In this document: in pieces, positions 1,323-46,399 of the stretch
Layout of the letters: the number at the start of each line of letters is the position of its first letter
Numbering within the stretch: the stretch's first letter is position 1
Origin: Hemiscyllium ocellatum
Lineage: Eukaryota
Length of the DNA stretch: 64,000 bases
Reading direction: 5' to 3'
NCBI RefSeq assembly: GCF_020745735.1
Contig: NC_083404.1
Span: 37,137,731 to 37,201,730, forward strand
Translations under genes and position numbers: made by a program
Notes under the pieces: model-generated
What the model saw: only the letters and a program-made list of their open reading frames with translations
The model's database searches: none
What the model was told of the DNA's origin: nothing

Positions 1323-1565
1323 TGGAATAGTCATAGTCACAGCATGGAAACAGACCCTTCGGTCCAACACGTCCATGCCGACCAGATATCTCAACCCAAT
1401 CCAGTCCCACCTGTCAGCACCTGGCCCATATCCCTCCAAACCCTTCCTATTCATATACCCATCCAAATGCCTTTTAAATGTTGCAATTGTGCCAGCCTCC
1501 ACCACTTCCTCTGGCAGCTCATTCCATACACGCACCACCCTCTGTGTGAAAAAGTTTGCCCCTTA
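1323..1565 (-). mobile_element. CR1 LINE 3' end
   Basis: Reverse-complement of CTATGACT tail, 3'UTR and RT C-terminus (ORF 1299-1538: VRVWNELPEEVVEAGTIATFKRHLD). Confidence 0.9.
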
Positions 1566-9947: not shown

Positions 9948-10068
9948 CTCTTGGTCCAAGGTACTGCCTTTGCTTATTTACTGCCAATCATCTCCTTCAT
10001 ACTAGCCTGGATTGAGACTTGGTTCCTGGATTTTAAAGTGTTGCCACAAGAGGCAAAGGATGAAAACA
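9948..10068 (+). CDS. STARD3NL: STARD3NL coding exon: LLVQGTAFAYLLPIISFILAWIETWFLDFKVLPQEAKDEN
   Basis: aatttag| acceptor, A|GTAAGT donor (121 nt, phase 0-1); LPIISFILAWIETWFLDFKVLPQEA is the conserved MENTAL C-terminal segment. Confidence 0.96.
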
Positions 10069-10591
10069 GTAAGTACATCTACTGCTTCTTTGCGTTGTCT
10101 ATTCCCCACAGGCTGTCCTCAGATAATTATAGGCATGTGATACAGATGGTACACAATAATTTGATTTGTAACACCAAATTTTGCAATGAAGCCAGTTCAA
10201 GTCCTAATTTTATCCACAAGACATACAGCAGATATAGGCTATTCAATGAGATCATGACTGATCTGATAATCCTCAACTCCACTTCCCTGCCTCTTCCCCG
10301 TAACCCTTGATTTCTTTTCTATTTAAAATTCTGTCTCAGTCTTGAACACGGTTAACAACCCGGCTTCAACGACGCTCTTTGGTAAAGAATTCCAACAGAT
10401 TTGCTATCATTTGAGAGAAGAAGTTCCTCCTCATCTTTGTCTTCATGTGCGAATCCTTATTCTGAGATTATGCCATCTTGTTCTCGATAAGGGGAAACAA
10501 TCTTTCCGTATCTACCCTGCCAAAACCCCTAAAAGTGTTGCATGTTCAATAAAGTCGTCTCTCCTTCTTCTATTTTTATTCTTTTTAAGAA

Positions 10592-11590: not shown

Positions 11591-14500
11591 GAGTCATAGA
11601 TCCCTTGAGATGTACAACACGGAAACAGACCCTTCAGTCCAACTCAGCTGGCCAGATATTCAAACCTAATCTAGTTCCATTTGGCCCATATCCCTCTGAA
11701 CCCTTCCTATTCACATACCCATCCAGATTCCCTTTAAATGTTTTAATTGTATCAGCCTCCAGCACTTCCTCTGGCAACTCATTCCATGCACACACACCAA
11801 CCTCTGCGTGAAAACGTTGCCCCTTTGGTACCTCTTAAATTTCTCACTCTTACCCTAAACCTATGCCCTCTAGTTCTGGCTCCTCCACCCCAGGGAAAAG
11901 ACCTTGTCCGTCTACCTTATCTTTGCCCCTCCATGATTTTTTTAAACCTCTTATAAGGTCATCCCTTAGTCTCCAGCACTCCAGGGAAAATGCCTTAGCC
12001 TATTCAGCCTCTCTCTGTGTAGCTCAAATCCTCCAATCCTGGCAACATCGTTGTGAATCTTTTCTGAACCCTTTCAAGTTTCACAACATCTTTCCGATAA
12101 GAGGGAGATAATAATTGCACATAATATTCCAACAGTGGCCTGACCAATGTCCTGTACAGCTGCAACATGACCTCCAAACTCCTGTACTCAATATTCTGAC
12201 CAATAAAGGAAAGCATATCAAACACCTTCACTATCCTATCTCCATGTGACTCCACTTTCAAGGAATTATTAACCTGTTCTCCACAGTCTCTTTGTTGAGC
12301 AACATTCTCTAGGACCTTAACATTAAGTGTATAAGTCCTGTCCTGATTTGCCTTTCCAAAATGCAGCACCTCACATTTATCTAAATTAAACTCCATCTGC
12401 CAATTGGTCCATCTGATCAAGATCCCATTGTACACTGAGGTATCCTTCTTTGCTGTCCGCTACACTTCCAATTTTGGTGTCATCTGCAAACTTACTAACT
12501 ATACCTCTTACGTGCACATCCAAATCATTTATATAAATGACAAAAAGCAGTGGACCCAGCATCGATCCTTGTGGCACACCACTGGTCACAGGCCTCCAGT
12601 CTGACAAAAGAGCCCTCCACCCTGCCCTCTCTTCTACGTTTGTGCCTGTTCTGTATCCAAATAGCTACTTCTACTTGTATTCCATGCGATCTAACCTTGC
12701 TAACAAGTCTTCCATGAGGGACCTTGTCAAATGACACCAAAATTGGAGGTGTAGTGGACAGCGAAGAGGGTTACCTCAGATTACAACAGGATCTTTACCA
12801 GATAGGCCAATGGGCTGGGAAGTTGCAGATGGAGTTTAATTCAGATAAATGCAAGGTGCTGTATTTTGGGAAAGCAAATCTTAGCAGGTCTTATACACTT
12901 AATGGTAAGGTCCTAGGGAGTGTTGCTGAACAAAGACCCCTTGAAGTGTAGGTTCATAGCTCCTTGAAAGTGGAGTTGCAGGTAGATAGGATAGTGAAGA
13001 AGGCATTTGGTATGTTTTCTTTTTAATTGGTCAGAGTATTGAGTACAGGAGTTGGGAGGTCATGTTGCGGCTGTACAGGACATTGGTTAGGCCACTGTTG
13101 GAATATTGCTTGCAATTCTTCCTTTTGGAAAGATGTTGTGAAACTTGAGAGGGTTCAGAAAAGATTTACAAGGATGTTGCCAGAGTTGGAGAATTTAAAC
13201 TATAGGGAGAGATTGAAAAGGCTGGGGCTCTTTTCCCCAGAGTGTCGGAGGCTGAGAGGTGACCTAATAGAGGTTTACAAGATTGAGGAGCATGTATAGG
13301 GTAAATAGATAAAGTCTTTTCCCTAGGGGCGGGGAGTCCAGAACTAGAGATCAGTTTAGGGTGAGAGGGGAAAGATATCGAATTGACACAGAGGGTGTTA
13401 AGTGTATGGAATGAGCTGCCAGAGGAAGTGGTGGAGGCTGGTACAATTGCAACATTTAAGAGGCACTTGGATGGGTATATGAATAAGAAGGGTTAGGAGG
13501 GATATGAGGCAGGTGCTGGCAGGTGGGACTAGATTGGGTTAGGATATCTGGTCAGCATGGATGGGTTGGACCAAAAGGTCTGTTTCCATGCTGTACATTT
13601 CTATGACTCTAAATACCTTAAAGTCTATATAGATCATGACCAATGCTTTGCCCTCATGAAACCTCTTCACCACTTCTTCAGAAAACTCAACCATGTTTGT
13701 GAGACATGATTTCCCTCGCACAAAGCCATGATGTCTATCCCTTATCAGTCCTTTCCATTCCAAATTCGGGTAGATCCTGTTCCTCGGAATTCCCTCCAAC
13801 AACTTGCCCACCACCAATATCAGGCTTACCTGTCTATAATTCCCTGCCTTTTCCTTACCACCTTTCTTAAATAGTGGCACCACGTTGGCCAACCTCCAGT
13901 TTTCAGCACCTAACCTGTGACTATTGATGATACAAATATCTCAGCAAGGGTACCAGCAATGACTTTCCTAGATTTCCACAAAGTTCTATTGTACACTTGA
14001 TCGTGTCCTGGGGATTTATGCACTTTTACGCACCATCACCTCTGTAATATGGACATTTTTCAAGATTTCACCATCTATTACCCCACATTCTATATCTTCT
14101 ATGTCCTTCTCCACAGTAAACACTGATGCAAAATACTCACTTTAGAATCTTCCCCCATCTCCTCTGGTTCCACACACAGGCTGTCTTGCTGATCGTTAAC
14201 GGGCCCTATTCTCTCCGTAGTTACCCTTTTTTTGTCCTTAATAAATTTATAACCTCCCTTTGGATTCTCCTTAATCCTATTTGCCAACAGTTATCTCATC
14301 TGCCGTTTTTTTGCTGATTTCCTTCTTAATTATACTCCTACTGCGTTTATATCCTTTTTAAGAATTAACTTAATCTCTGCTGTCTATACCAAGCACATGC
14401 TTCCTTTTTTGTTCTTAATCAAAACTTCAATTTATTTCAACATTCAGCTTTCCCTACCAGCCTTGCCTTTTCCCCTTACCTTATTAAGCAGCCTAACGTG
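11591..14500 (-). mobile_element. CR1 LINE (ORF2 RT to 3' tail), interrupted by a second CR1
   Basis: Minus ORFs: [52 protein letters not shown]; GAGTCATAG tail at 11591. Confidence 0.93.
12733..13610 (+). mobile_element. 5'-truncated CR1 nested in the opposite-strand CR1
   Basis: DTKIGGVVDSEEGY..KDVVKLERVQKRFTRMLP, ends ctatgactct; AAAT on both sides. Confidence 0.9.
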
Positions 14501-14819: not shown

Positions 14820-14918
14820 GAGTCTTTGTGGTGTCTGATGTATCAGAGCATGCACCTCTTATTCTTCCTGGCCCCCTATCTGATGGACAGTTTTATTCTC
14901 CTCCTGAATCTGTTGCTG
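14820..14918 (+). CDS. STARD3NL: STARD3NL coding exon: (R)VFVVSDVSEHAPLILPGPLSDGQFYSPPESVA, includes the FFAT-type motif GQFYSPPES
   Basis: ttattctag| acceptor, G|GTGAGT donor, 99 nt phase 1-1; LSDGQFYSPPES is the VAP-binding (phospho-)FFAT region of STARD3/STARD3NL. Confidence 0.94.
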
Positions 14919-17900
14919 GTGAGTATCATAGATGTGCAATGGAAATTGTGGGGAAGTTTCAACCTGTACAGGCTCATAACTACCAATAATCATTAATGGA
15001 TTGTTAATGACTTTCCTAGATTTCCACAAAGTTCTATTGTACACTTGATCGTGTCCTGGGGATTTATGCACTTTTACGCACCATGGAATGTTAATTTGCA
15101 ACAGATTTGTGTTCATTGTGTGAAATGTACAATCATATTAAGAATATGGATGGTCTAATTAATTTCCACTTAAATATCTGATTGCTATCCTGACTGCAAA
15201 TCTGCATTAATTAACCGTTCATCGAAATTTCGGCTTAAAGGAAACCCATGAGATATTCAGGAAATGGCAGTTGTCCAGGACACTTCAGAAACTGAGTGGG
15301 CGTGTTATTCTATGGTCCCATCTACTCTTCTCATAATAGCAGTAGTCTCTTTTTTTCTCCCTGTGTGACATACATCATTCTTGAGAATTTGGACTTCCAA
15401 CTTATCCACTTCCCTGCACAATTTATTTCCACCCATAAACTGACTGCATGCTGTAATGCACGCTGTAGTCTGCGGAAAAAAATGTGGTTCTGAATCTAGT
15501 GCCTACTGGCACTGCATTCCCTTTCTTAGCACCTGTTATCATAGACAATTTAATCCTGCCTTAACACTTGGTGCAAGCCACTGAAACCCACCATCTCCTA
15601 GAACTAAATTCCTCCCATAGTCTTCCACCACTAACTAACTCAGCTGTCAGTGGTGGAATACAATGGGAGCAATTTCACTCCTCCAGATCTGCAGTGTCCC
15701 AACCATCTTCCACTTGCTGCATCCACATTGGTAGAAGAAAGTTCCTCTTCCAAGTGAAATTCTGTCTCACCTGCACCATCAATAAAACCTCTGATCCCTG
15801 GCCTCCTGAACTTTTTTCCATCTGTACTTCTGCTGCTTTTCACTTTCCACTTCCTCTTTCACAAAGTAGTATGACCACTCATCAAATATTTATTTTTGTG
15901 TTTTGTCTAATCATGTGTCTATGTAATCAGTTTTTATGGTAAAGATACAAATTAAATACAGATTATTGTTTTCCTAATGTATTATATATCATATTCCTAA
16001 GTGCTTCTGAAATTTAAGCATTCTTGCACGGAACGGGACCAGTCCTTCTGTAAGCAAGTTCTAAACAGTTAAGCATTGGTGGTACTAGAAGGTACTTGCC
16101 TTTCACTGGTGTAGGCGTCATCAATTTATCTTTGACTGTGAACCAAGAGTCATGCTGGCTAGAAGCACATGCAGAAAATCAAGTGTTAACATGCTCTCAT
16201 AAGAATTGTGTTGGTTCACTTGTTCACTAATAAGCTTATGATCCAGATGTTGGCAAAGGTTTTGTAACTTTTTTATAAATGCTGCAGTTTTTCCAGTTTG
16301 CTCTTATATTTGTTTTTTGCATGCTTAAAATAAGCTACAACCTATTCATATTCCTGAGTAAAATGCTGACTGAATAGTTATTGTTATTCCTCTCCAGAAT
16401 ATGCTTTCCGGCACCATAGGACAAAACTCAATTTTTGAATTGTATTGTGTTATGAGCAATTGCTGAGCATTTTTCAAACATGGTCTTCTGTTCTCTGGAC
16501 AGTCTTTTGAAGTGTAAATTCAGTTCTAACCAGTTCGGAAGAGGTTGAAGTGACGCTGATTCTCAGAAGTACATTTTTCTGAAGCACAAAGCAGCTGCTA
16601 ACCAATGACTATCCTGCAATGTAACCATGCTGATTGCTATTTTTAGGTTGGTTGATCAGGGTTGATGTGATCATTTTGCATTGAAGCTATCATGAGTGCT
16701 GATTTTTTTTTTTATTTTTGCTTTGGAAATAATTCAATTTTCTCCATAAACTAGGATGCATAACTTATTGTAGGTTAATGAGCCCAACATTCAATAGAAG
16801 ACCCCCTTTTTGTGGGCTGTGCCATTTCAGTTGCCAATTTTTTGAACAATGTGCAATACAGTAGGAGCACCATCTCTCCACCATATCCTCCCTTGTTCAG
16901 TTATTTTCATAAGGGTGGATTGAAACTTTTCTTTTGAGGGATTGATTCTCTGCTGCAGGGGCCTGTTTCCTAAATCTTTAGAGCCAACTCATGATCTTAA
17001 ACCGCAGTGAGTATTTCCTGCATTGTGTTAATTGCAGCTGTTTTGTCTGGGTTAAGTGTTGCAGGTGTGAGTTGTGGGAGTTTAACTGTTTTTAACCACA
17101 GAATAACTATCAATTCACTTATCTTGGGGGCTGTCCTTCAGAATCTGCTATAAATAAAAAAAATTCCAAAAATGTTTATCTTTAAGAGGAACTAAAATAT
17201 AATTGCACAGGCTAGCTGTAACTGAAAGGATTGTCCGTGTAGCATTTAAATATTCTGCTGAGTAATATTTGAATGTTTTAACATGTTTGTGCTGTGCAAC
17301 AAAATAAGTTAATGTGTTAAAAAGCCTTGCCAGGGGACAGTAAGACAACAGTTGGGGTAACCTTTGCAATTATAATAAATATACATTTACATTTATAAGA
17401 AAGATGTTGAGACAATGGATATGTGCAGGACAGATACACTGGACCACTGCCTACTGCAGGAAGTTAGAAATGTGAAAAAGATCTAAATTAGAATTGTTTG
17501 TGTTGAACCAAGATTGTAGCTGGCAGCATATGATGCAGCACAAAAAGAGGCTATTTGGCTAATTGAGCCTGTGCTAACTCTTCGATAGAGCTATCAAAAT
17601 AGTTCCCCTTTACCCTTTCCAGATAGCATCTAAAAATATTTCTTTTCAAATGTTTTTCCAATCTCTTTTTGAATATTACTGTTGCATCTGTGTCTACATC
17701 TTTCAGGCAGTTCATCTGGATCACAGCAACTTGATGTGTTTTAAATTTTAAAAATTCCTCATGTCATTTCAAGACTGTCCTATCTCCACAATCAATTGGA
17801 AGCATTTCTTCAGTTGTAGGGAGAGCAGCTGCATTATTGGTTTCTCTACCTATGCCCATCTCTCATACTAGTACCATTCTGGTCAACTTCTTCTGCATCC

Positions 17901-18399: not shown

Positions 18400-18800
18400 T
18401 AGAGTCATAGAGACATACAGTGTGGAACAGACCCTTCGGTCCAACTCATCCATGCCGACCAGATATCTTAAATTAGTCTAGTCCCATTTGCCAGCATTTG
18501 ACCAATATAAACCCTATGTATTCATGTACCCATCCAGATGCCTTTTAAATGTTGTAATTGTACCCATCTCCACCAGTTCCTCTGGAAGCTCAATCCATAC
18601 ACACATCACCCTCTGCCTCTTTCCCCTCTCACCTTTAAACCTACGCTGTCTAGTTTTTGACTCCCTACCCTGGGGAAAAGGCCCTGGTTATTCACTCTAT
18701 CCATGCCCCTCATGATTTTATAAACCTCAATCAGGTCACTCCTCAGTCTGTGATGCTCCAGGGAAAACAACCCTAGCCTATTCAACCTCTCCCTATAGCT
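18400..18800 (-). mobile_element. CR1 3' fragment
   Basis: gagtcatag tail plus RT C-terminal sequence, same family as 1323-1565. Confidence 0.85.
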
Positions 18801-19799
18801 TTTTTTCTAACAACTCTATTATATTGTCATCTATCCAGTGACTTTCTGAAAATCCATATACTCAATATAAGCTGCACCACCTTCATCAAATCTGTCTAGT
18901 TCAAACGTCTTGATGAAATTAATATATTTAGCAAATTGATTTCACTTCATATTTCCTGCATCTGTAGTTCTTTTGGGTGTTTTTTTAACCATTAGTTTCA
19001 TATTAGCTCATGTTTTCCAAATGGCAATTCATTTTATCTTGGGCCTTTAAGATTTTTGCACCATTTAATGTTAAGTTGGCTATCCTGGAGGTATAACAGT
19101 TTATCTGTCTCCTTTCTTGAGTTGAGGGGTTTTTTTTTAAACCTTCTGTGCCCTTTCAGAGCTCCCCTATTTAAGGATATTTGGAAGATTGTGCTTACTT
19201 CCTCCACAATTTACACTTTTGGTGACCTAGGGTTTACACCTATATGTGCCAGTTAATTGCTGTCAAACCTTTTAACTACCTCTCTTTATGTTACCCAATC
19301 CAATATTGCTCCTCATGTCTCCCTTGCTGCTACACTACAGCCATCATCACTAGAATACAGGCTATGGCCAATGTACTCAGCAGCTCCATAATATAACTCT
19401 CAAACCACCCATTATCTGCAAAACTATTCATGTATTTTCTTTGTCCTTTTCTTTTCAGTTTCCTCTGTACTTCCCATATTCACCTTGGTTCCCTATTAAA
19501 TTATGAACTGACATCCATTGATTTGGTTTTTTCATGTTTATTTAATTTTATTAAAGTTGTATTTAATTCGCTACCAAGGGAGCTCTAGCTTTCAGTGCCA
19601 TTCCACTCACTTTAATGGGAGAGTGTCTGTTTAACACAAAAGGAAAATTCTGCAGATGCTGGAAATCTGAAATAGTAATGAAAAAATGCTAGAAATACTC
19701 TGCAAGTTAGGCAACATCATGGAGAGAAACAGATTATGAGAAGAGAGGCAAAATTGATAGAAGCAGACTGTGTTTCCAGCTGTGAAGGCTGCGATCAAG

Positions 19800-20380
19800 C
19801 GTCATAGGGTCACAGGGAGGTAAAGCAGGGAAACAGATCCTTTGGTCCAACTTGTCCATGCTGACCAGATATCCTAGTCCCATTTATCAGCATTTGGCCC
19901 ATATCCTTCTAAACCCTTCCTATTCATATACCCTTCCAGATCTCTTTCAAATGTTGTAGTTGTACCAGCCTTCTCCACTCCCTCAGCCAGCTCATTCCAG
20001 ACACACACGACCTTTTGTGTGAAAAAGCTTCCCCTTAGGCCCCTTTTTAAATCTTTCGCCTCTCACCCTAAACCTTTTCCCTCTAGTTCTGGACTACCCC
20101 ACCCCAGGGAAAATACCTTGTCTATTAACTCTATCCATGCCCATCATGATTTTATAAACATCTGAAGTCATCCCTTAGCCTCTGCTACTCTAGGGAAAAC
20201 AGCCCCAGCCTCTTCAACCTCACGTCATGGCTCAAACCCTCCAACCCTGGCAACATCCTTGTAAATCTTTTCTGAACCCTTTTCAAGTTTCACAACATCT
20301 TTCCGATAGGAACGAGACCAAAATTGCACACGATATTCCAAAAGTGGCCAAACCAAAGTCCTACACAGCTGCAACATGAT
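19800..20380 (-). mobile_element. CR1 3' fragment
   Basis: Same 3'UTR/RT C-terminal sequence in reverse orientation. Confidence 0.85.
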
Positions 20381-31250: not shown

Positions 31251-32101
31251 AATGGAGCAGTGGAATTAGAGGAAAAGTGTCTTTTGTTGCTTACTGATTT
31301 GTGATCCATTCTCTGCCTTTTTATCACCTTGTTTTAATCTATTGATTTTACTGTCCTGACAAAGTCATGTGTTTTAAACCCATCAAATAATTTTATTGTT
31401 TTGATTTCTAATTACCTAATTATTTTGAACGCCTTAATTTTTTTATATTCATTCACAGAATGAGGGCATCTCTGGCTAGATCAGCATTTATTGCCCATTT
31501 CTAATTGCCCAGAGAACAGTTAAGAGTCAACCACATTGCTGTGGGTCTGGAGGCATATGTAGGCCACACGAGGGTTAGGGTGGCAGTTTAATTCTGTAAA
31601 GGGCATTAGTGAACCACGTAGATTTATCAGACAATCAACAACTTATTCCTGGTCGTCATTGGACTCCTAATTTCAGAATTTTTTAAAAATTCAAATTTCA
31701 TAATCTGCTGTGTTGGATTCGAACCCAGAATATCACCCCAGTTTCTAGATTAACAATTCAGCAATAATACCATTCAGCCTTTGCCTCCCTGTTTATGTTT
31801 GTGGAATTGCTACATGTATTATGGTAGCCTCATTAATACATTTTTTTTCATTCATTTCAGAACAGGCCTAGTGGTCAGGAAAGGTCAAATTACCCAGAGA
31901 CAGGATTGTTGGTATTAAATGATCTACCAGAGACATTTAAAATCTGTTTCTGCAAAGCATTTAACAACCCTGCATCCAGTTTTGATGAAGAGCTCTAAGT
32001 TTCAAAGTTCAACTGTTAATCACATCAGTGTTGTTATACAGAATAATATTTGAATGCATCTTTCAAAATAATGTGTTTTTTAGTGTAACCCTTGACCTCA
32101 G

Positions 32102-32211
32102 GCGATGGCGGTCAGAGCATCTTTCGAGAACAACAATGAGGTCAGCTGCTTCGTCAAACTCACCATCACATACTGCCTGGTGGCGGTGGGAGGATCTGAG
32201 AACTTCTACGG
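32102..32211 (+). pseudogene. EIF6: EIF6 first coding exon fragment (ATG 32105: [35 protein letters not shown]) with flanking splice sites
   Basis: Translation matches the eIF6 N-terminus [36 protein letters not shown]; 107 coding nt then GTGAGC donor; no further EIF6 exons seen in window; substitutions at conserved positions (G>S, A>V, N>I, S>G). Confidence 0.93.
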
Positions 32212-32307
32212 GTGAGCACGGGGGGAGAGAGGGGCCCCGGGGTGGGGGAGGAGAAAGAGTAGCCCTGGTGTGGGCGTGTGAGTGGGGGAACAGGGGCCCC
32301 GGGTAAA

Positions 32308-35300
32308 GGTTGTTTTGCTTCCCTGGTGCCAGGATCAAGGATGTCTCAGAGAGGGTTTTCATGGGGGAGAGGGGCCAGCAAGAGGTCATTGTCCACATTG
32401 GAACCAATGACATTGGAAGGGGAATGGTTGAGATTCTGAAGGGAGATTACAGAGAGGCAGAAATTTAAAAAGGAGGTCCTTGAGAGTAGTATCTGGATTA
32501 TTCACGCAGCAATGAGCGAGTGAAGGCAGGAATAGGAGGATAGAGCAGATGAATGCATGGCTGAGGAGCTGGTGTATGGGAGAAGGATTCACATTTTGGA
32601 TCATTGGAGTCTCTTTTGGGGTAGAAGTGACCTGTACAACAAAGACGGATTGCACCTAAATTGGAAGGGGACTAATATACTGGCAGGGAGATTTACTATA
32701 GCTGCTCAGGAGGATTTAAACCTAGTAAGATGGGGGTGGGGGGGGGGGGGTACCCAGGGAGATAGTGAGGAAAGAGATCAATCTGAAACCGGTACAGTTG
32801 AGAACAGAAGCGAGTCAAACAGTCAGGGTAGGCAGGGACAAGGCAGGACTAGTAAATTAAGCTGCATTTATTTCAATGCAAGGGGCCTAACAGGGACAGC
32901 AGATGAACTCACAGCATGGTTAGGAACATGGGACTGGGATATCAAAGCAATTACAGAAACATGGCTCAGGGATGGGCAGGACTGGCAGCTTAATGTTCCA
33001 GGATACAAATGCTACAGGAAGGATAGAAAGGGAGGCAAGAGGGAGCGGGGGGTGGGTGGGGGGGGAGCATTTTTGGTAAGGGATAGCATTACAGCTGTGC
33101 TGAGGGAGGATATTCCTGAAAGTACATCCAGGGAAGTTATTTCGGTGGAACTGAGAAATAAGAAAGGGATGATCACCTTATTGGGCTTGTATTATAGACC
33201 CCCCTCATAGTCAGAGGGAAATTGAGAAACAAATTTATAAGGAGATCTCAGCTATCTGTAAGAATAATAAGGTGGTTATGGTAGGGGATTTTAACTTTGT
33301 AAACGTAGACTAGGAATGCCATAGTGTTAAGGGTTTAGATGGAGAGTAATGTACCTACTAGAGAAGGTGCAAAACATGACCTACTCTTGGGAAATAAGGC
33401 AGGGCAGGTGACAGTGGGGGAGCACTTTGGGGCCAGTGACCATAATTCTATTAGATTTAAAATAATGATGGAAAGGGATAGACCAGATCTGAAACTTGAA
33501 GTTCTAAATTGGAGAAAGGCCAATTTTGATGGTATTAGGCAAGAACTTTCAAAAGCTGATTGGGAGCAGATGTTCATAGGTAAAAGGACGGCTGGAAAAT
33601 TCGAAACCTTCAGAAATGGGATAACGAGAGTCCAGAGACAGTATATTTCTGTTAAGGTGAAAAGAAAAGCTGGTAGGTATAGGGAATGCTGGATGACTAA
33701 AGAAATTGAGGGTTTGATTAAGAAAAAGAAGGAAGCACGTGTAAGGTATAGACAGGATAGATCGCGTGAATACTTAGAAGAGTATAAATGAAGTAGGAGC
33801 ATACTTATGAGGGAAATCAGGAGGGCTAAAAGGAGACATGAGATAGATTTGGCAAATAGAGTTAAGGAGAATCGAAAGGGTTTTTACAAATAGGTTAAGG
33901 ACAAAAGGAGTAACTAGGCAGAGAATAGGGCCCCTCAAAGATCAGCAAGACGGCTTTGTGTGGAGCCATGGGAGATGGGGGAAGATACTAAATTAGTATT
34001 TTGCATCCATCTTTACTGTGGAAAAGGATATGGAAGATAGACTGTAGAGAAATAGATGGTGACATCTTGCAAAATGTCCATATTACAGAGAAGGAAGTGC
34101 TAGATGTCTTGAAACGGGTAAAGATGGATAAAACCCCAGGACCTGATCAGGTGTACCCTAGAACTCTGTGGGAAGCTAGAGAAGTGATTGCTGGGCCTCT
34201 TGCTGAGATATTTGTATCATTGATAGTCACAGGTGAGATGCCAGCAGACTAGAGGTTGACTAACATGGTACCACTGTTTAAGAGGGGTGGTCAGGACAAG
34301 CCAGGGAGCTATAGACCAGTGAGCCTGACATTGGTGGTGGACAAGTTGTTGGAGGGAATCCTGAGGGACAGGATGTATGTGTATTTGGAAAGGCAAGGAC
34401 TGATTAGGGATAGTTAACATGGCTTTGTGCGTGGAAAATTATGTCTCACAAACTTGATTGAGTTTTTTGAGGAAGTAACAAAGTGGATTGATGAGGGCAG
34501 ATTGGTTGATGTGACCAATATCAACTTAAGTAAGGCGTTCGACAAGGTTCCCCATGGGAGGCTGATTAGTAAAGTTAGCTCTCACGGAATACAGGGAAAA
34601 CTCGCCATTTGGATACAGAACTGGCAAAAAGGTAGAAGACAGAGGGTGGTGATGGAGGGTTATTTTTCAGACTGGAGACCTGTGACCAGTGGGTGCTGGG
34701 TCCTCTACGTTTTGTCATTTACATAAATGATTTGAATGTGAGCATAAGAATTCCGGTTGGTAAGCTTGCAGATGACACTAAAATTAGAGGTGTAGTGGAC
34801 AGCGAAGAGGGTTACCTCAGATTACAACAGCTTCTTGACCAGATGGGCCAATGGGCTGAGAAGTGGCAGATGGAGTTTAATTCAGAGAAATGCGAGGTAC
34901 TGCATTTTAGGAAAGCAAATCGTAGCAGGACTTATACATTTAATGGTAAGGTCCTAGGGAGTGTTGCTGAACAAAGAGACCTTGGAGTGCAGGTTCATAA
35001 CTCCTTGAAAGTGGGGTCACAGGGAGATAGGATAGTGAAGGAGGAATTTGGTATGCTTTCCTTTATTGAGTACAGGAGTTTGGAGGTCACGTTGCAACTG
35101 TACAGGTCATTGGTTAGGCCACTATATTGGAATATTGTGTGCAATTCTGGTCTCCTTCCTATCGGAAAGATGTTGTGAAACTTGAAAGGGTTCAGACAAG
35201 ATTTACAAGGATGTTGCCAGGGTTGGAGGATTTGAGCTGTAGGGAGAGGCTGAATGGGCTGGGGCTGTTTTCCCTGGAGCATTGGAGGCTGAGGGGTGAC

Positions 35301-35670
35301 CTTATAGAGGTTTACAAAATTGAGGAGCATGGATAGGGTAAATAGGCAAAGTCTTTTCCCTGGGATCGATGAATCCAGAACCAGAGGACATAGGTTTAGG
35401 GTGAGAGGGGTAAGATATAAAAGATACCTAAGGTGCAACGTTTTCACACAGAGGGTGGTACGTGTATGGAATGAGCTGCCAGAGGAAGTGGTGGAGACTG
35501 GTGCAATTGCAACATTTAAGAGGCATTTGGATGTGTATACGAATAGGAAGGGTTTGGAGGGATATGAGCCGGGTGCTGGCAGTTGGGACTAGATTGGGTT
35601 GGGATATCTGAGCGGCATGGATAGGTTGGACTGAAGGGTCTGTTTCCATGCTGTACATCTATATGACTCT
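32308..35670 (+). mobile_element. Long CR1 LINE: ORF1 esterase-like remnant, ORF2 APE endonuclease + RT, 3' tail; disrupted by stops and frameshifts
   Basis: ILDHWSLFWGRSDLYNKDGLHLN (ORF1), CIYFNARGL..AITETWL..GLYYRPP (APE), FDKVPHGRL, LADDTK (RT), ctatgactct end at 35670; 5' truncated within ORF1. Confidence 0.95.
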
Positions 35671-36623
35671 ATAACTTAACAATTTGAATTTGTTAAAAAT
35701 GTTCAGACTACTTTTATTTGGAAACTTCATTTCTAAAGTGAATGTATAATTTTAAGTTTAATCTGTATTTTTATATTATGTGGGTGAATAAGAGAAGGAC
35801 TTGACTTCATTTTTGAGTTCTTTGAGTGAAATTGTGGTATCTGGAGACCTGTTTGCATGCATTTAGATGAGCAATTTTTTAAAAAAGGAAAATCCCTTGA
35901 GATGATTAGTTCAGTGCTTTAGAAAAATAAGAGTAGAAAATAGGAGGGATAAAACTGGACTATTGCCTAGCAATAAATGAGGAGATGGAAATAGTTTTGC
36001 TTTTGGAAATGCAGAACTATTCAGAAGTACAGTAAGGGTGCAAGTTTCTGTTAGAGCAATCAGATCTTTGAAAGTAAGGGGGCTATTATCATTTTTTAAA
36101 GTAATTTCACAGAAAAAATGTCCTAATTAAATAGGTAAGGGAAAGCTCAAGAACCTGAAGGCTGTAAAAGAGGAATTTTAAAAACATGCGTTAAGAAATA
36201 TGTGTGATGCATTAGTTTGTTGAAGGGTCTCCTGAAAAGACATTTGCCAGACAGAAACCAACTAGACATGTTCTCTGAATAATAATCTTTAAAATGCAAG
36301 CAGTGACACTTCAATGCAGTTTCAGTACATGTAATGTTGAGGGCAATAGAATTGAACCTTTATTCTTTATATTTGTAACAAAACTTTTTTCAATTATATT
36401 CTTGTGTAGTGAAAAAAATAAGTGTTTTGTTCTTTGATTAAATGTATATTAACAACCCCATTGTGAATATGTTCAGTGACTGACCATCACAGTAAGTAAA
36501 TTGAAAACATAAATATATACAGCAGTATCTTCCCAGCCTTTGAAGGGCATAGCAATGTCAAGTCAGTTCAGAAAATATGGTAAGATTCACAACTTCAAAG
36601 GAAAAATAATCTATTCTGTGACT

Positions 36624-39069: not shown

Positions 39070-40295
39070 AATCTAAGTGACAAAGAAGACAGAGTGGTGG
39101 ATGTTGTCTATATGGACTTCAGTAATGCATTCAACATGGTTCTGCATAGTACACTGATTAGCAAAGTTAGAACACGTGGAACACAGGGAGAACTAGCCAT
39201 TTTATTACAAACTTTGATGGTTTGATGGTAGGAGACCGAGCATGTTTGTTAAGGGTTGTTTTTCAGACTGTAGGCTTGTGACTAGCAGGCTGCCAAGGAT
39301 TGGTGCTGGGTCCAACACTTTTTGTCATTTATAAAAATGGTTTTAATGTGAATATAACATGTATGCTTAGGAAGTTTGCAAATGACACCAAAATTGGAGA
39401 TGTAGTGAACAGCAAAGAAGGTTACCCCAGAGTACAATGGGACCTTGATCAGATTGGCAAATGGATTAAGGAGTGGCTGATGGAGTTGAATTTAGATAAA
39501 TGTGAGACACTGCATTTTGGTAAGGCAAATCAGGGCAGGACTTGTACATTTTACGGTAATGTCCTGAGGAATGTTACTGAGCAAAGAAACTTTGGAGTGC
39601 AGGTTTGCAGTACCTTGAAAGTGGAGTTGCACGTAGACAGGGTGGAGAAGACATTTGAATACTTGCCTTATTGGTCAGTGCATTGAGTATAGGAGTTGGG
39701 CGGTCATGCTGCAGCTTTGCAGATTGTTGGTTAGGCCACTTTTGAAATACTGCATTCAATTCTGGTCTTCCTGCTATAGGAAAGATGTTATGAAACTTAG
39801 AAGGGTACAGAAAATATTACAAGAAATTTGACAGGGTTGGAGAGTTTGAGCTGTAGGGAGAGGCTGAACAGGCACGGGCTATTTTCCCTGCAGCATCAGA
39901 GGCTGAGGGGGGGGGTCTTATAGAGGTTTATAAAATTATGAGAGGCATGGATAGGGTGAACAGCCAAGGTCTTTTCCCCAGAGTGGGGGAGTCCAAAACT
40001 TGAGCACATAGGTTTAAGATGAGAGGGGAGAGATCTGAAAGTGACCCAAGGAGCAACTTTTCGCACAGAGGGTGGTACTTGTACAAAATGAGATGCCAGA
40101 GGGAGTGGTGGCGACTGGTACAATAACAACATTTAAAAGGCATCTGGATGGGTATATGAATAAGAAGGGTTGAGAGGGATAAGGGCCAAGTGCTGGCAAA
40201 TGGGACTAGATTAATTTAGGCTATCTGGTCGACATGGACAAGTTAGACCGAAGGGTCTGATTCTGTTCTGTATATCTCTATGACTATATGACTCT
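39070..40295 (+). mobile_element. CR1 RT to 3' tail
   Basis: VLGPTLFVIY..FANDTKIG; ctatgactatatgactct end. Confidence 0.9.
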
Positions 40296-40559
40296 GCAAT
40301 GGAAAAGGAAGTGATCATTTTGTAGAATCTGATGATGTTGAGTGCGTCATTCCAAAACCACAGCAAACAACGAATTGTTCCCTCTGGTGATGAAACATTG
40401 ACAGTACATATTGAGTTTCTCACCAACAAAATGGGTGTTACATTAAATCTGGTAAACACTGCCACATAATTCCACACAACAAAAAAAATCTCAAAAGCAT
40501 TTGGAAACTTTAACAAAATAGGAGTTCCAAGGCAGTCACAGGAGTTTATAAAAAAAAGA

Positions 40560-42267
40560 TGAAAACACAGCCTTTGTGTGGAGCCACAGAAAATGGGGGA
40601 GATACTAAATGAATATCTTGCATCAGTATTTACTGTGGAAAAGGATATGGAAGATGTAGGGAAATAGATGGTGACATCTTGCAAAATGTCCAGATTACAG
40701 AGGAGGAAGTGCTGGATGTCTTGAAATGGTTACGGGTGGATAAATCCCCAGGAACTGATCAGATATACCCGAGAACTCTGTGGGAAGCTAGAGAAGTGAT
40801 TGCTGGGCCTCTTGCTGAGATATTTGTATCATCGATAGTCACAGGTGAGGTGCCGGAAGACTGGAGGTTGGCAAAAGTGGTGCCACTGTTTAATAAGGCC
40901 GGTAAAGACAAGCCAGGGAACTATAGACTGGTGAGCCTGACCTCGGTGGTGGGCAAGTTGTTGGAGGGAATCCTGAGGGACAGGATGTACATGTATTTAG
41001 AAAGGCAAAGACTGATTTGGGAAAGTCAACATGGCTATGTACGTGGGAAATCATGTCTCACAAACTTGATTGAGTTTTTTGAAGAAGTAACAAAGAAGAT
41101 TGATGAGGGCAGAGCAGTGGATGTGATCGAGATGGACATCAGTGAGACGTTCGACAAGGTTCCCCATGGGAGACTGATTAGCAAGGTTAGATCTCATGGA
41201 ATACAGGTAGAACTAGCCATTTGGATACAGAACTGGAAGATAGAGGGTGATGGTGGAGGGTTGTTTTTCAGACTGGAGGCCTGTGACCAGTGGAGTGCCA
41301 AAAGGATCAGTGCTGGGCCCTCTACTTTTTGTCATTTACATAAATGATTTGGATGCGAGCATAAGAGGTACAGTTAATAAGTTTGCAGATGACACCAAAA
41401 TTGAAGGTGTAGTGGACAGCGAAGAGATTACAACAGGATCCGGACCAGATGGGCCAATGGGCTGAGAAGTGGCTGATGGAGTTTAATTCAGATAAATGCA
41501 AGGCGCTGCATTTTGAGAAAGCAAATCTTAGCAGGATTTATATACTTAATGGAAAGGTCCTAGAGAGTGTTGCTGAACAAAGAGACCTTGGAGTGCAGGT
41601 TCATAGCTCCTTGAATGTGGAGTCACAGGTAGATAGGATAATGAAGAAGGCATTCGGTATGCTTTCCTTTATTGGTCAGAGTATTGAGTGCAGGAGTTAG
41701 GAGGTCATGTTGCAGCTGTACTGGACATTGGTTAGGCCACTGTTGGAATATTGCATGCAATTTTGGTTTCCTTCCTATCGTAAAGATGTTGTGAAACTTG
41801 AAAGGGTTCAGAAAAGATTTACAAGGATATTGCCCGGGTTGGAGGATTTAAGCTACAGGGAGAGGCTGAACAGCTTGGAGCTGAGGGATGACCTTATAGA
41901 GGTTTACAAAATTATGAGGAGCATGGATAGGATAAATAGACAAAGTCTTTTCCCTGGAGTTGGGGAGTCCAGAACTAGAGGGCATAGTTTTAGGGTGAGA
42001 GGGGAAAGATATAAAAGAGACCTTCTGTGCAACGTTTTCACACAGAGGGTGGTACGTGTATGGAATGAGCTGCCAGAGGATGTGGTGGAGGCTGGTGCAA
42101 TTGCAACATTTAAAAGACAATTGGATGGGTATATGAATAGGAAGAGTTTGGTGGGATATGGGCCAGGTGCTGGTAGGTGGGAACAGATTGGGTTGGATAT
42201 CTGGTCGGCATGGATGGGTTGGACCAAAGGGTCTGTTTCCATGCTGTACATCTCTATGACTCTATGA
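40560..42267 (+). mobile_element. CR1 RT to 3' tail, comparatively well preserved
   Basis: ORFs 40679-41347 and 41707-42267 give the RT domain and C-terminus; ctatgactctatga tail. Confidence 0.93.
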
Positions 42268-43098
42268 CATAACATGAAAAGATATTCAACACGAATGGTC
42301 AAAAGCTTTAAAGGTTTTTGATAACAAGACTTAAAGTAATGTGGCATCTTTCAGAACAAGTCAAAATGTCAAAGTATTTAGAACAACCACAGAGCAATGT
42401 AGCAGAGAAGAATCACATTCAGCTCATCATATATCATAGTCAACAAAATACTTTCTGAAACATAGTAATTCAGCATATGTGACAACTAACTCGATAAGTC
42501 AAACAAATTGCTCAAATAGCAATATCTGAATGACCAGATAATCCTATAGTTTTCAGTAAGGAATAGATATTGTCCAGGAAAAGACTTCTGTTAAAATTAT
42601 GCCATGGATCCCATACATCCATTGGAATGGGCAGACAGATCTTCATCTTCACAAGACAGCACCTCCAACAGTGTAGGATTTCCTTAGTACGACATTGGAA
42701 AAATCAGTCCAGTCTTTTGTGCTCAATTCCTGAATCTCACAATCTACAAAGGCAAGAGTGCTACCAACTGAACCACAACTGAACCACATCTGACATTAGA
42801 TTTATGGAGAATCTTGAAGTGTCTGGGGACTCTTAGAAAAATTAAGATTCAAGAAGCTAAAGGCACAACCGCTGATAATGAAGCAAGGAGAATAAACTTG
42901 GGAAAATAGCCGCCAAAATTAAAGGAGTGCAAATAATTTTGGAGGGTTATAGGGCGTTCCACAGTCACAGATGGATATACGAATAGAGGAATTTTGAAAC
43001 AGTGAGAATTTGAATTGAAGTATTGCTTAATCAAGAATTAATGCAAGCCAGTAAGCACTGGGCGAATGGAAGAATGGAAGTGGCTGCTGGTTAGGACA

Positions 43099-43413
43099 TA
43101 GATTAGATTAGATTACTTACAGTGTGGAAACAGGCCCTTCAGCCCAACAAGTCCACACCGACCCGCCGAAGCGCAACCCACCTATATCCTAGATTTACCC
43201 CTTACCTTACACTACAGGCAATTGAGCATGACCAATTCACCTGACTCGCACATTTTTGGACCGTGGGAGGAAACCGGAGCACCCGGAGGAAACCCACGCA
43301 GACACAGGGAGAACGTGCAAACTCCACACAGTCAGTCGCCTGAGTTGGGAAATGAACCCGGGTCTCAGGCGCTGTGAGACAGCAGTGCTAACCACTGTGC
43401 CACCGTGCCGCCC
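43099..43413 (-). mobile_element. HE1-type V-SINE, near full length
   Basis: Reverse-complement of the 10592 copy including GGGCGGCACGGTGGCACAGTGG head. Confidence 0.9.
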
Positions 43414-43444
43414 ACAAGGCTGCAGACATTGATTGATTGATTGA

Positions 43445-43730
43445 CTAAATGATTGTCATGTGTAGCAAAGTACAGTGAAAAACTTTGTTTATGAGCAGTA
43501 CAGGCTGGTCATAGTAAGCAAGGATGTACAGAGGGCACACCACCTTCTGTAGTTTCTTAAAGTCCTGGGCAGAGCAGTTGCCATACTGGGCCATTATGCA
43601 CCTGGACAGAATGCTTTCAATAGTGTATCTGTAGATGTTGTTGAGGGTCCTTATGGACATGCCAAAATTTCCTGACCCAGCTGAAGAAGAGGAGATGTTG
43701 TTGTGCCTTCTTGACCATCACATCTACTTC
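43445..43730 (-). mobile_element. Rex1/Babar-like LINE 3' fragment (related tail about 47760-48005 on +)
   Basis: TIESILSRCIMAQYGNCSAQDFKKLQKVV resembles the Rex1/Babar RT C-terminal motif; ttcaagaacagcttcttcccc at 47.8 kb. Confidence 0.6.
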
Positions 43731-44149
43731 AAGTTTACAGAGAGTAAGCCACTGAAGCGGCCAGGAATGCAATAAAAAATCGTATCTGGAGGTAACTAAG
43801 GAATGGGTGAAGGTTTCAGTAACAAATGAGCTAATGCAGGGGAAGAGTTGGACAACTTAACAGTGGAGGTTTTGATTTGCATGATGCTGTGAATATGAAG
43901 AGCTCAGGTCAGGATAAAGGTGTGAGACATGTGCAGCCTCAGATATTTGCCAAGCAGAGGCATGGAAATGGAAAAGCGGAGGTAGTTTATTGTAGAGACT
44001 AATGACAATGGGCTCAGTCTGTTCAAAACTAAATTGGAGGAAATTTTTCTTAATCCAATATTGCATGTTGGAGAAGCGGTGTGGCAATTTAGTGACAGTG
44101 GAGGAATCACAAGATGTGATGATGTACTAGAGTATGGAGTTGTAGCTGA

Positions 44150-46140
44150 CACAAACTGATATTATAACCAGGGAAATAGTGAGGAAAGAGATCAATCTGA
44201 GATTGGTACAGTTGGGAAAAGGAGCAAGTCAAACACTCAGGGCAGGCAGGAGCAAAGCAGAAAGCAAGGTAGGACTGATAAATTAAACTGTATTTATTTC
44301 CATGCAAGAAGCGTAACGGGGATGGCAGATGAACTCAGGGTAGATTAGGAACATGGGATTGGGATATCATAGCAATTACAGAAATATGGCTCATGGATGG
44401 ACAGGACTGGCAGTTCAATTTTCCAGTATACAAATACTACAGGAAGGATAGAAAGGGAGACAAGAGAGGAAGGGGTGCGGCGTTTTTGATAAGGGATAAC
44501 ATTACTGCTGTACTGAGGAAGAAATACATCCAAGGAAGTTATTTGGGTGGAACTGAGAAATAAGAAAGGGATGATCACCTTATTGGGATTGTATTATAGA
44601 CCTCCTAATAGTCAGCGCAAAATTGAGAAACATATTTGTAAGGAGATTTCAGTTATTTGGAAGAATAATATGGTGTTTATAATAGGGGATTTTCATTTTC
44701 CAAACATAGACTGGGACTGCCATAGTATTAAAGGTTTAGATGGAGAGGAATTTGTTAAGTTTGTACAAGAAAATTTTCTGATTCAGTATGTAGATGTACC
44801 TACTAGAGAACTAGTAGGACTACTTCTTGACCTACTTTTGGGAAATTAAGCAGAGCCGGTGACTGGGGTGTCATTTGGGGGGTATTTTGAGATGAATGAC
44901 CATAATTCTAATTGTTTTAAAGTAGTCATGGAAAAGGATCAAAATGTTAAAGGAAGGCTAATTTTGACAGTATTGAGCAAGGACTTTCAAAAGCTGATTG
45001 GCGGCAGATGTTCACAGTTAAAGGGATGGTTGGAAAATGGGAAGCTTTCAAAAATGAGATAACAAGAGTTCAGAGACACAATATTACTTGTGAAAGAAAA
45101 GGTTGGTAGGTGTAGGGAATGCTGGATGACTAGAGAAATTGAGGTTTTGGTTAAGAAAAAGAAGGAAGCATATGTCAGGTATAGCCAGGATAATTCAAAT
45201 GGATCCTTAGAAGAGTATAAAGGCAGTAGGAGTATACTTAAGTGGGAAATCAGGAGGCCAAAAAGGGGGCAGAGTTAAGGAGAATCCAAAGGGATCCAAA
45301 CACACGTCATGTTGACCACCCCTAATCAGTCCTTGCCTTTCCAAACGCATGTAAATTCTGTCCATCAGAATCCCCTCCAACAACTTACTCACCATTGATA
45401 TCAGATTCACCAATCTACAGTTCGCTGGCTTTTCCTTATCAACTTTCTTAAATAATGGCACCACATTAACCAATCTACAGTCTTCTGGTGCCTTGCCCAT
45501 AGCTATCGATGATACAAATATCTCAGAAAGGAGCCCAACAATCTTTACCTAGCTTCCCACAAAGTTCTGGTGTATACCAGATCAGGCCCCAGGAATGTAC
45601 CCACCATTATGTGTTTTAAGATGTGCAGCACCTCCTGCTCTGCAACATAAACATTTTCAAGATATCACTATTTATTTCCCCAAGTTCTCTAGCTTCCACA
45701 TCCTTCTCCATGTAAACATGGATGCGAAATACTCATTTAGTATCTCACCTAACTCCTGCACTTCTACCCATAGGCAGCCTTATTGATCTTTAAGGGACTC
45801 TATTCGCTCCCTAGTTACTCTTTTCTCCTTAACATATTTGTAGAATATATTAAGAATCTTTTTCAATTCTTCATGACTATCACACATCACCTTTTTGCCC
45901 TCTTGATTTCCATCTTGAATATGCTCCATTTACCTTATACTTGTCAGGGATTCACTTGATCACTGTTGTCTATACTTAACATATACATCCTTCTTTTCCT
46001 TGACTATAGCCTGAATTTCTGTCATCATCCAATATTCCCTACACCCACTAGCCTTGCCTTTTGCACTAATAGGAACATACTATCTCTAAACTGTCATTAT
46101 CACATTTTTTAAGGCCTCCCACTTTCTACTGGTCCCATTA
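44150..46140. mobile_element. Two CR1 ORF2 fragments tail-to-tail (APE on + 44150-45290; pre-RT/RT on - 45295-46140)
   Basis: ELRNKKGMITLLGLYYRPPNS on +; VNVVPLFKK..LLEGIL on -. Confidence 0.85.
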
Positions 46141-46399
46141 CCTGTGAACCAATAACAGTTCATCAATTTGGGAGATATTCTTATCTGAAGATAGTCTTGA
46201 AAGCAACCCCTCTGTAGTATCTCTTAACAAAATTGCACAATAATCACTACGAAGAAAGTTATTTGGTGCATTTTAATGTAACCATTTTAAATCCTCTTTA
46301 TTGTAGTATCAAACAGCAGGTTTAGAGAATGAAAGTAATGATGATTAGAATTAGATAGATTGGGTTGAAAAGCAGTCAGAATTACGATATGATGTCACA

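What the first reader, a model, noticed from the sequence alone, without database searches (positions are those of the whole stretch)
32085..32340. EIF6 exon with intron sequence fused to the 5' end of a CR1 LINE (gene-fragment capture)
Seen: pyrimidine tract + cctcag|GCG ATG, 107 coding nt of the eIF6 N-terminus, a GTGAGC donor, about 95 bp of GC/G-rich intron-like DNA, then directly the ORF1 remnant of a 3.4-kb same-strand CR1 (tgcttccctggtgccaggatcaaggatg). No other EIF6 exons seen; four conserved residues are changed. Known: processed pseudogenes lack introns; CR1 RT is considered specific for its own 3' tail, and chimeric retrocopies by template switching are described mainly for L1. Inference: either CR1 RT switched onto unspliced EIF6 pre-mRNA, or a CR1 sitting in the EIF6 intron was mobilised with upstream host sequence (5' transduction). 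If multi-copy, it is a LINE subfamily carrying a host exon. Both splice sites look intact and lie about 0.85 kb past the inferred STARD3NL polyA on the same strand, so read-through splicing is possible.
Basis: partly seen in the sequence, partly recalled or inferred. Interest (0 to 1): 0.8.

Follow-up and report, generated by a model that had tools for sequence, protein, structure and literature searches.

The report
Stray EIF6 exon joined to CR1
A single, decaying copy of the first coding exon of the translation factor gene EIF6, still carrying a piece of its intron, sits directly against the broken front end of a shark CR1 jumping gene; it is probably a by-product of one CR1 copying event and shows no sign of function.

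Summary
Window 32102-32211 (+) is a copy of the first coding exon of EIF6: 36 codons, 30/36 identical to stingray eIF6, ending at the conserved exon boundary with a GT donor. Then come 95 bp of 70%-GC low-copy DNA, then a 5'-truncated, frameshifted CR1-like LINE (32307-35675, +).

- No other EIF6 exon lies in the 64 kb.
- Contigs from a second individual bridge both junctions, so it is not a misjoin.
- At most one other locus in the genome matches the exon. That contig carries the conserved Gly14 and Asn21 and is presumably the real EIF6. The "LINE subfamily carrying a host exon" reading is refuted.
- Two related species (about 5% diverged) have the exon at the same site. One also shows the CR1 tail at its site. 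The insertion is therefore old, and the exon copy drifts neutrally.
- The "intact" AG acceptor is a CpG-to-CpA change private to this species.
- No RNA data were available.

Origin in one CR1 reverse-transcription event is the best reading, at about 0.6. Read-through of an intronic CR1 versus template switching stays unresolved, because the parental gene could not be fetched.

The scan holds two unchecked notes of similar CR1/pre-mRNA chimeras elsewhere in this genome.

The parts
32048..32055 (.). Candidate upstream target-site duplication, ATTTGAAT. The partner is at 35682-35689.
   Evidence: It is the only exact match of 8 nt or more between the two flanks. Shuffle p = 0.11, and the downstream copy lies 6 nt past the CR1 tail. 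The evidence is weak and inconclusive.
32056..32101 (+). AT-rich stretch before the exon, with a T-run and two candidate acceptors: ttttttag ending at 32083, and cag ending at 32101. It could be EIF6 upstream intron/5'UTR or local flank; the boundary is not fixed.
   Evidence: Read. GC is 35%, like the flank. Species B and C have G at 32087 and 32100, so the AG at 32100-01 is private to species A. A second contig in species C also covers 32087-32166.
32102..32211 (+). Copy of the first coding exon of EIF6. ATG at 32105, 36 codons, ending in phase 2 (TAC GG|gt).
   Evidence: Exon changes between species A, B and C (32135, 32144, 32153, 32166) are all non-synonymous, which indicates neutral decay.
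32212..32306 (+). Intron-like G-rich DNA starting with the GTGAGC donor. It contains AGGGGCCCCGGG twice (32230-41 and 32292-303).
   Evidence: 70.5% GC, 52 G in 95 nt. Low-copy depth, so it is not part of the CR1 family. No similarity to any CR1 copy on either strand of the window.
32307..35675 (+). 5'-truncated, decayed CR1-like LINE.
- ORF1 esterase remnant: 32307-32760.
- APE endonuclease: about 32869-33123.
- RT: about 34427-35175.
- 3' hairpin: 35612-35653.
- Octamer-type tail: ...CTATATGACTCTATAAC.
   Evidence: Pfam hits: OSK/SGNH-like at profile 51-91/202, so the domain start is missing; Exo_endo_phos 1.8e-6; RVT_1 4e-6. Frames run 0,1,0,2,2,2,1,0,1, which means at least 5 frameshifts and 2 stops. 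Hairpin -26.2 kcal/mol, z -2.46. Family tail (TCTATGAC)n and no poly(A). Unique contigs end at 32336-32340, so the high-copy repeat starts near 32307-32311.
35682..35689 (.). Candidate downstream target-site duplication, ATTTGAAT.
   Evidence: see the upstream partner.

Best explanation
This is a fixed, low-copy, non-functional chimeric retro-insertion. One CR1-driven reverse-transcription event laid down 3.4 kb of CR1 sequence. It then continued, in the same sense, into unspliced EIF6 RNA: 95 nt of the intron after the first coding exon, the exon itself, and perhaps 20-45 nt before it. The cDNA was then joined to the chromosome in the STARD3NL-TCR gamma intergenic region.

This happened before three related species split, and the copy has decayed neutrally since.

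My favoured route takes about 55% of this explanation. The template was an EIF6 pre-mRNA that already held a 5'-truncated sense CR1 about 95 nt into that intron. CR1 proteins acting in trans primed on the embedded CR1 3' hairpin and tail, and read through the old CR1 into host sequence (a 5'-transduction-like event).

The other route takes about 45%. The reverse transcriptase was copying an active CR1 RNA and jumped to an EIF6 nascent transcript.

Shown:
- the anatomy
- low copy number
- presence in three species
- neutral drift
- real junctions

Inferred:
- that the G-rich DNA is EIF6 intron
- that exon and CR1 arrived together
- which route was used
For: - The EIF6 exon ends exactly at the conserved exon boundary with a GT donor, followed by non-CR1, low-copy, 70%-GC DNA. 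The source was therefore unspliced.
- The foreign GC-rich block abuts the CR1 truncation point with no AT-rich flank between, and has the same orientation as the CR1.
- The whole block (exon, intron-like DNA and CR1) sits between AT-rich flanks of 30-34% GC, and the CR1 3' end is a normal family terminus.
- No other EIF6 exon lies within the 64 kb.
- The exon differs at only two listed positions from the second (parental-type) contig of the same individual. It is present, contiguous with the upstream flank, in species B and C. The CR1 tail plus downstream flank is present in species C. The two parts are therefore of compatible age.
- Most CR1 contigs are 90-99% like this copy.
- Stingray EIF6 genes span 67-75 kb for 245 codons, so huge TE-filled introns make an intronic sense CR1 plausible.
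- L1 makes the same kind of first-exon/LINE chimeras (PMC13174262).
- Two unchecked notes of similar CR1/pre-mRNA chimeras exist in this genome.
Against: - The parental EIF6 locus was not seen, so neither the identity of the G-rich DNA as EIF6 intron nor the presence of a CR1 in that intron is shown.
- The target-site duplication is only an 8-mer (p 0.11), offset 6 nt from the tail.
- No empty site was available, because all three species carry the insertion.
- In the source individual no second contig was laid on 32087-32100. Parental similarity upstream of the ATG is therefore supported only by a second contig in species C.
- The contig of species B has 48 unaligned letters after 32208, so the exon-to-CR1 link is directly shown only in species A.
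- CR1 reverse transcriptase is held to be template-specific (PMC5470649), although that concerns 3' end recognition.
Confidence: 0.6

Rival explanations
1. Two unrelated events, or a DNA-level capture. A roughly 200-250 bp piece of EIF6 genomic DNA was pasted here as filler during double-strand-break repair, or as a micro-duplication. The CR1 either inserted next to it independently, or the filler was captured by end-joining while the CR1 5' end was being sealed. No EIF6 RNA was reverse-transcribed.
For: - There is no convincing target-site duplication around the whole unit.
- The upstream boundary of the EIF6-derived part is undefined.
- Unspliced sequence on both sides of the exon is what a DNA copy would give.
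- CR1 insertions are so common here (ten copies in this 64 kb) that chance neighbours are expected.
Against: - The GC-rich block ends exactly at the CR1 truncation point.
- It is in the same orientation as the CR1.
- It does not resume after the CR1 3' end, where GC drops to 30%.
- Both parts are already present in the related species.
Confidence: 0.3
2. A LINE subfamily that carries a host exon. The EIF6 exon would be part of a CR1 master copy and would have spread to many loci.
For: None found.
Against: - At exon positions only 1-2 contigs lie at 80% likeness or more in each of four runs.
- Summed depth is 8-120 there, against 2e5-2e7 on the CR1 body.
- No second copy exists in the window.
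- No chimeric eIF6-CR1 protein stood out among the 150 best representatives.
Confidence: 0.02
3. The fragment is used. It would be spliced into read-through STARD3NL transcripts, or serve as a small ORF or exon of a new transcript.
For: - It lies on the same strand as STARD3NL (exons at about 9948-10070 and 14880-14930).
- AATAAA signals lie at 31206 and 31241.
- It has a good GTGAGC donor, and an AG in species A.
Against: - The AG at 32100-01 is absent from species B and C.
- All between-species changes in the exon are non-synonymous, including the conserved Gly14 and Asn21.
- The exon length, 110 or 128 nt, is not a multiple of three.
- No RNA run holds the stretch, though this is weak negative evidence.
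Confidence: 0.04
4. An assembly misjoin between the real EIF6 locus and a CR1.
For: The repeat-rich context makes misjoins conceivable.
Against: - Error-free contigs from a different individual bridge flank to exon (31533-32133) and exon through intron into the CR1 (32104-32340).
- Orthologous contigs in two other species join the flank to the exon.
Confidence: 0.01

Closest known systems
L1 5' transductions and mRNA/LINE-1 chimeric insertions (PMC13174262)
   Same: A host gene's 5' exon lies in sense orientation, fused upstream of LINE sequence and inserted elsewhere as one unit. Proposed routes include transcription of an intronic LINE from the host promoter.
   Different: - Those are L1 elements, poly(A)-primed, usually full-length and flanked by clear 12-15 bp duplications, and the exon is usually spliced to the LINE.
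- Here the LINE is CR1-like and 5'-truncated.
- The exon keeps unspliced intron sequence after it, and possibly before it.
- No clear duplication is seen.
Template-switch chimeras such as U6/L1 (PMC4476161)
   Same: A cellular RNA copy is joined to the 5' end of a truncated LINE, in the same orientation. That paper also reports a possible U6/CR1-like chimera in turkey and U6/SINE chimeras in platypus and lizard.
   Different: The partners there are abundant small RNAs copied to their 5' end. Here the partner would be an internal piece of a nascent pre-mRNA. The turkey CR1 case was left unresolved.
Processed pseudogenes (retrocopies)
   Same: A dead, dispersed copy of part of a housekeeping gene.
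   Different: There are no spliced exon junctions and no poly(A), only one exon is present, and intron sequence is retained. The defining features are not met.
CR1-type (stringent) LINE mobilisation of RNAs that share its 3' tail, as for SINEs (PMC5470649 for CR1 specificity)
   Same: Under the favoured route, any RNA with a CR1 3' hairpin and tail, such as a pre-mRNA with an intronic CR1, is a legitimate template in trans.
   Different: SINEs are short dedicated RNAs. Here the passenger would be host pre-mRNA lying upstream of a dead CR1. This was not shown directly.

Membership tests
eIF6 (Pfam PF01912) coding sequence | Significant similarity to the eIF6 N-terminus | tested here: met
   phmmer E down to 2e-17 against eIF6 proteins. 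30/36 identities to stingray eIF6 residues 1-36. The 36-aa piece alone is too short for the Pfam cut-off.
eIF6 (Pfam PF01912) coding sequence | A complete gene: the remaining exons nearby | tested here: not met
   tblastn with five full-length eIF6 proteins finds only 32105-32227 in the 64 kb.
Processed pseudogene | Intron loss and a poly(A) tail | tested here: not met
   Similarity ends at the exon boundary with a GT donor and intron-like DNA. There is no downstream exon and no poly(A).
CR1-like LINE (CR1/L2 group) | ORF2 with an APE endonuclease and a reverse transcriptase | tested here: met
   Exo_endo_phos 1.8e-6; RVT_1 4e-6 and 8e-4.
CR1-like LINE (CR1/L2 group) | ORF1 with an esterase (SGNH-type) domain | tested here: met
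   VHIGTNDIG motif and a weak OSK/SGNH-like hit (E 0.005, below the cut-off) to profile 51-91 of 202. The domain is present but cut at its start.
CR1-like LINE (CR1/L2 group) | A 3' stem-loop followed by a short microsatellite tail, with no poly(A) | tested here: met
   Hairpin at 35612-35653, -26.2 kcal/mol, z -2.46. Tail (TCTATGAC)n shared by the other copies in the window.
CR1-like LINE (CR1/L2 group) | Placement inside the CR1 clade, rather than L2 or Rex1, on a reverse-transcriptase tree | not tested
   No tree was built. 'CR1' is used here in the broad sense.
LINE 5' transduction / chimeric LINE insertion | One target-site duplication flanking host part plus LINE | tested here: inconclusive
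   Only ATTTGAAT (8 nt), shuffle p 0.11, offset 6 nt from the tail.
LINE 5' transduction / chimeric LINE insertion | The source locus shows the host sequence directly upstream of the same LINE (transduction) or without it (template switch) | not testable with these tools
The exon ORFs are not in the protein collection.
LINE 5' transduction / chimeric LINE insertion | Host part and LINE part are of the same age | tested here: inconclusive
   Both are present at the orthologous site in related species. The divergence of the CR1 from its master copy could not be measured.

The most novel reading that the evidence does not exclude
In this shark lineage, CR1 machinery regularly reverse-transcribes host pre-mRNA, either through intronic CR1 tails or by template jumps. 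This locus and the two other unchecked notes (GPR139-like and CPSF3) would then be members of a recurrent class of intron-containing, CR1-linked gene-fragment retrocopies. That would be a route of exon shuffling in a genome whose dominant LINE is thought unable to make retrocopies.
Probability: 0.25. Interest if true: 0.65.

Novelty: new variant of a known kind. Interest (0 to 1): 0.35.

Why it matters
CR1-type LINEs dominate shark, reptile and bird genomes. Because they recognise their own 3' end, they are cited as the reason those genomes have few retrocopies.

A host exon with its intron fused to a CR1 5' end shows, if it arose in one event, that CR1 reverse transcription can still carry host gene pieces to new places. 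It would bypass the 3'-end rule by riding on an intronic CR1 tail or by template jumping.

One old, dead copy changes little by itself. Its value is as a worked example and a search image for a genome-wide count.

Tried and rejected
1. Other copies in the window: exact or 3-mismatch search and blastn at word size 7 found only the locus itself. No other CR1 copy in the window reaches 5' of position 32751, so no family consensus exists for the junction.
2. Parental EIF6 DNA could not be fetched.
   - The stingray gene is found, but no DNA is served because the files are too large.
   - The 36-aa exon ORF and three variants deduced from reads are not in the protein collection.
   - The 116-aa antisense ORF spanning exon, intron and CR1 had no relatives.
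   - An exact 38-mer scan of metagenome contigs found nothing.
3. The single read-laying run included the CR1, so its joint and loose-end tables were flooded by CR1 contigs. The parental contig's extent and any low-copy flank repeats could not be read. A stretch with the CR1 body left out would have been better.
4. RNA evidence: no run on record as RNA holds the stretch. This is not evidence of silence.
5. tRNA search in the upstream high-copy repeat: none found.
6. Considered and rejected:
   - The G-rich DNA as CR1 5'UTR/ORF1 sequence. Rejected because its depth is low-copy.
   - A twin-priming inversion. Rejected because there is no reverse-strand similarity to the CR1.
   - An old EIF6 paralogue relic. 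Rejected because there are only two listed differences from the parental-type contig, and no other exons.
Full report
**What is there**

- AT-rich DNA of 30-35% GC ends in ...gtgttttttagtgtaacccttgacctcag.
- GCG ATG follows at 32102-32107.
- The 107 coding nt at 32105-32211 translate to [36 protein letters not shown].
- GTGAGC follows at 32212, then 95 bp of very G-rich DNA (32212-32306; 70.5% GC, 52 G).
- From 32307 the frame reads RLFCFPGARIKDVSERVFMGERGQQEVIVHIGTNDIG. This is the middle of the esterase-type ORF1 of a CR1-like LINE.

**The eIF6 match is real**

- phmmer against 1.84 billion representatives gave 424 hits. The listed ones are eIF6 N-termini, with E down to 2e-17.
- BLASTP to stingray eIF6 gives 30/36 identities over residues 1-36, E 8e-21.
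- Many database ORFs that read genomic DNA through this exon leave the spliced protein right after ENFY. The window's similarity therefore ends at the conserved exon boundary, next to a GT.
- tblastn with five full-length eIF6 proteins finds nothing else in the 64 kb.
- The neighbourhood is STARD3NL, with exons on the + strand at about 9948-10070 and 14880-14930, followed by a TCR gamma locus according to other notes. This is not where EIF6 lives.

**The LINE**

- Pfam finds a weak OSK/SGNH-like match covering profile positions 51-91 of 202. The start of the ORF1 domain is therefore missing.
- Pfam also finds Exo_endo_phos (1.8e-6) and RVT_1 (4e-6).
- The ORF pieces change frame at least five times and are broken by at least two stops.
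- The 3' end has a hairpin at 35612-35653 (-26.2 kcal/mol, z -2.46).
- The tail is ...CTATATGACTCTATAAC. It matches the family tail (TCTATGAC)n seen in nine other truncated copies in the window, and there is no poly(A).
- I call it CR1-like in the broad sense, because no RT tree was made.

**Copy number, reality and age**

All of this comes, with runs chosen.

- Contigs from another individual of the same species (X1) match without a single difference. They bridge flank to exon (31533-32133) and exon through the G-rich DNA into the CR1 (32104-32340). The junctions are therefore not an assembly artefact.
- The unique contigs stop at 32336-32340, which places the start of high-copy sequence near 32307-32311.
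- On the exon, each run has only one or two contigs at 80% likeness or more, with summed depth 8-120. The CR1 body has 2e5 to 2e7. The exon and the G-rich DNA are therefore low-copy, and there is no exon-carrying CR1 subfamily.
- In the source individual, a second contig over the exon has G at 32144 and A at 32166. These restore the conserved Gly14 and Asn21, so it is presumably the real EIF6. It shows no other listed difference over the part laid.
- Two related species (B and C, about 5% diverged in the flanks) have contigs that run from the upstream flank into the exon: B covers 31921-32208 and C covers 31537-32215.
- Species C also has a contig that starts in the CR1 tail (35650) and continues through the downstream flank. 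The exon is therefore older than the split of all three species, and the CR1 is at least older than the A/C split.
- Between the species the exon differs at 32135, 32144, 32153 and 32166. All four changes are non-synonymous, as expected for neutral drift.
- Species B and C have G at 32100. The T-run plus AG ending at 32083 is the better candidate for the original acceptor.
- Gly36 is the cartilaginous-fish residue, and Val17 shows no difference in any contig. Only two of the 'four changed conserved residues' are real decay.

**How it arose**

The evidence favours one event.

- The GC-rich foreign block abuts the CR1 truncation point with nothing between.
- It has the CR1's orientation.
- It does not resume after the CR1 tail.
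- Both parts are already present in the sister species.
- The fragment is of unspliced type, so the template was pre-mRNA or DNA, not mRNA.

Two RNA routes fit.

- Route (a): an EIF6 pre-mRNA with a dead sense CR1 95 nt into the intron was used in trans via the CR1 3' hairpin and tail. Reverse transcription ran through the CR1 into intron and exon.
- Route (b): a jump from an active CR1 RNA to an EIF6 nascent transcript.

Stingray EIF6 genes span 67-75 kb, so large TE-filled introns are the rule. This makes route (a) easy. L1 is known to do both (PMC13174262, PMC4476161). CR1 specificity (PMC5470649) concerns the 3' end and forbids neither route.

I give the single-event reading 0.6, split about 55:45 between (a) and (b).

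A DNA-level capture or chance adjacency gets 0.3, for three reasons.

- The only target-site duplication candidate is an 8-mer (ATTTGAAT, 32048-55 and 35682-89; shuffle p 0.11; 6 nt beyond the tail).
- No empty site was available.
- The parental locus could not be fetched.

**Function**

Nothing suggests any.

- No RNA run holds the stretch, though that is weak evidence.
- The acceptor is species-specific.
- The coding changes hit conserved residues.
- The exon length is not a multiple of three.

**Context from the scan**

Two unchecked first-stage notes in the same genome describe similar CR1/pre-mRNA chimeras: a GPR139-like case and CPSF3 exon 17. I did not test them. They raise the possibility of a recurrent process, which is the most novel reading left open.

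**Verdict**

- The chimeric-origin reading is plausible but unproven.
- The multi-copy reading is refuted.
- The splicing potential was overstated.

This is a CR1 version of a phenomenon well known for L1. It is old and inert, and of moderate interest mainly as a search image.

Noticed in passing
window 31368-31900: A very high-copy short repeat lies just upstream. Summed contig depth is 1e3-1e6 in all three species. It contains a tRNA-like 'gttggattcgaaccc' motif, but ARAGORN calls no tRNA. It is probably a SINE.
   Followed up: partly
The last exon and the poly(A) site themselves were not verified.
   Followed up: partly
window 1339-1568, 11592-14478, 18400-20379, 39090-46149, 53590-55314: At least nine other truncated copies of related CR1-like elements lie on both strands, 73-90% identical to this one. 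They share the 3' hairpin and the (TCTATGAC)n tail.
   Followed up: partly
window about 31921-31924: Two contigs of species B each carry 25-53 unaligned letters at this point. This suggests an insertion in B, or a deletion in this species, about 180 bp upstream of the exon (records 25 and 26).
   Followed up: no
window 32208 onward, species B contig: The orthologous contig of species B has 48 further letters after 32208 that did not align to the G-rich DNA at 80% likeness. The cause could be G-run length changes or a real difference (record 26).
   Followed up: no
window 32040-32060 and 35784-35967: Extra contigs, 2-7 times single-copy depth, cover short parts of both flanks in all runs. If they belong to one older low-copy repeat, its other copies would give the exact insertion boundaries.
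   Followed up: no
stingray EIF6 loci: EIF6 spans 67.5 and 74.8 kb in two stingray assemblies for a 245-residue protein, far larger than expected for this small housekeeping gene.
   Followed up: no
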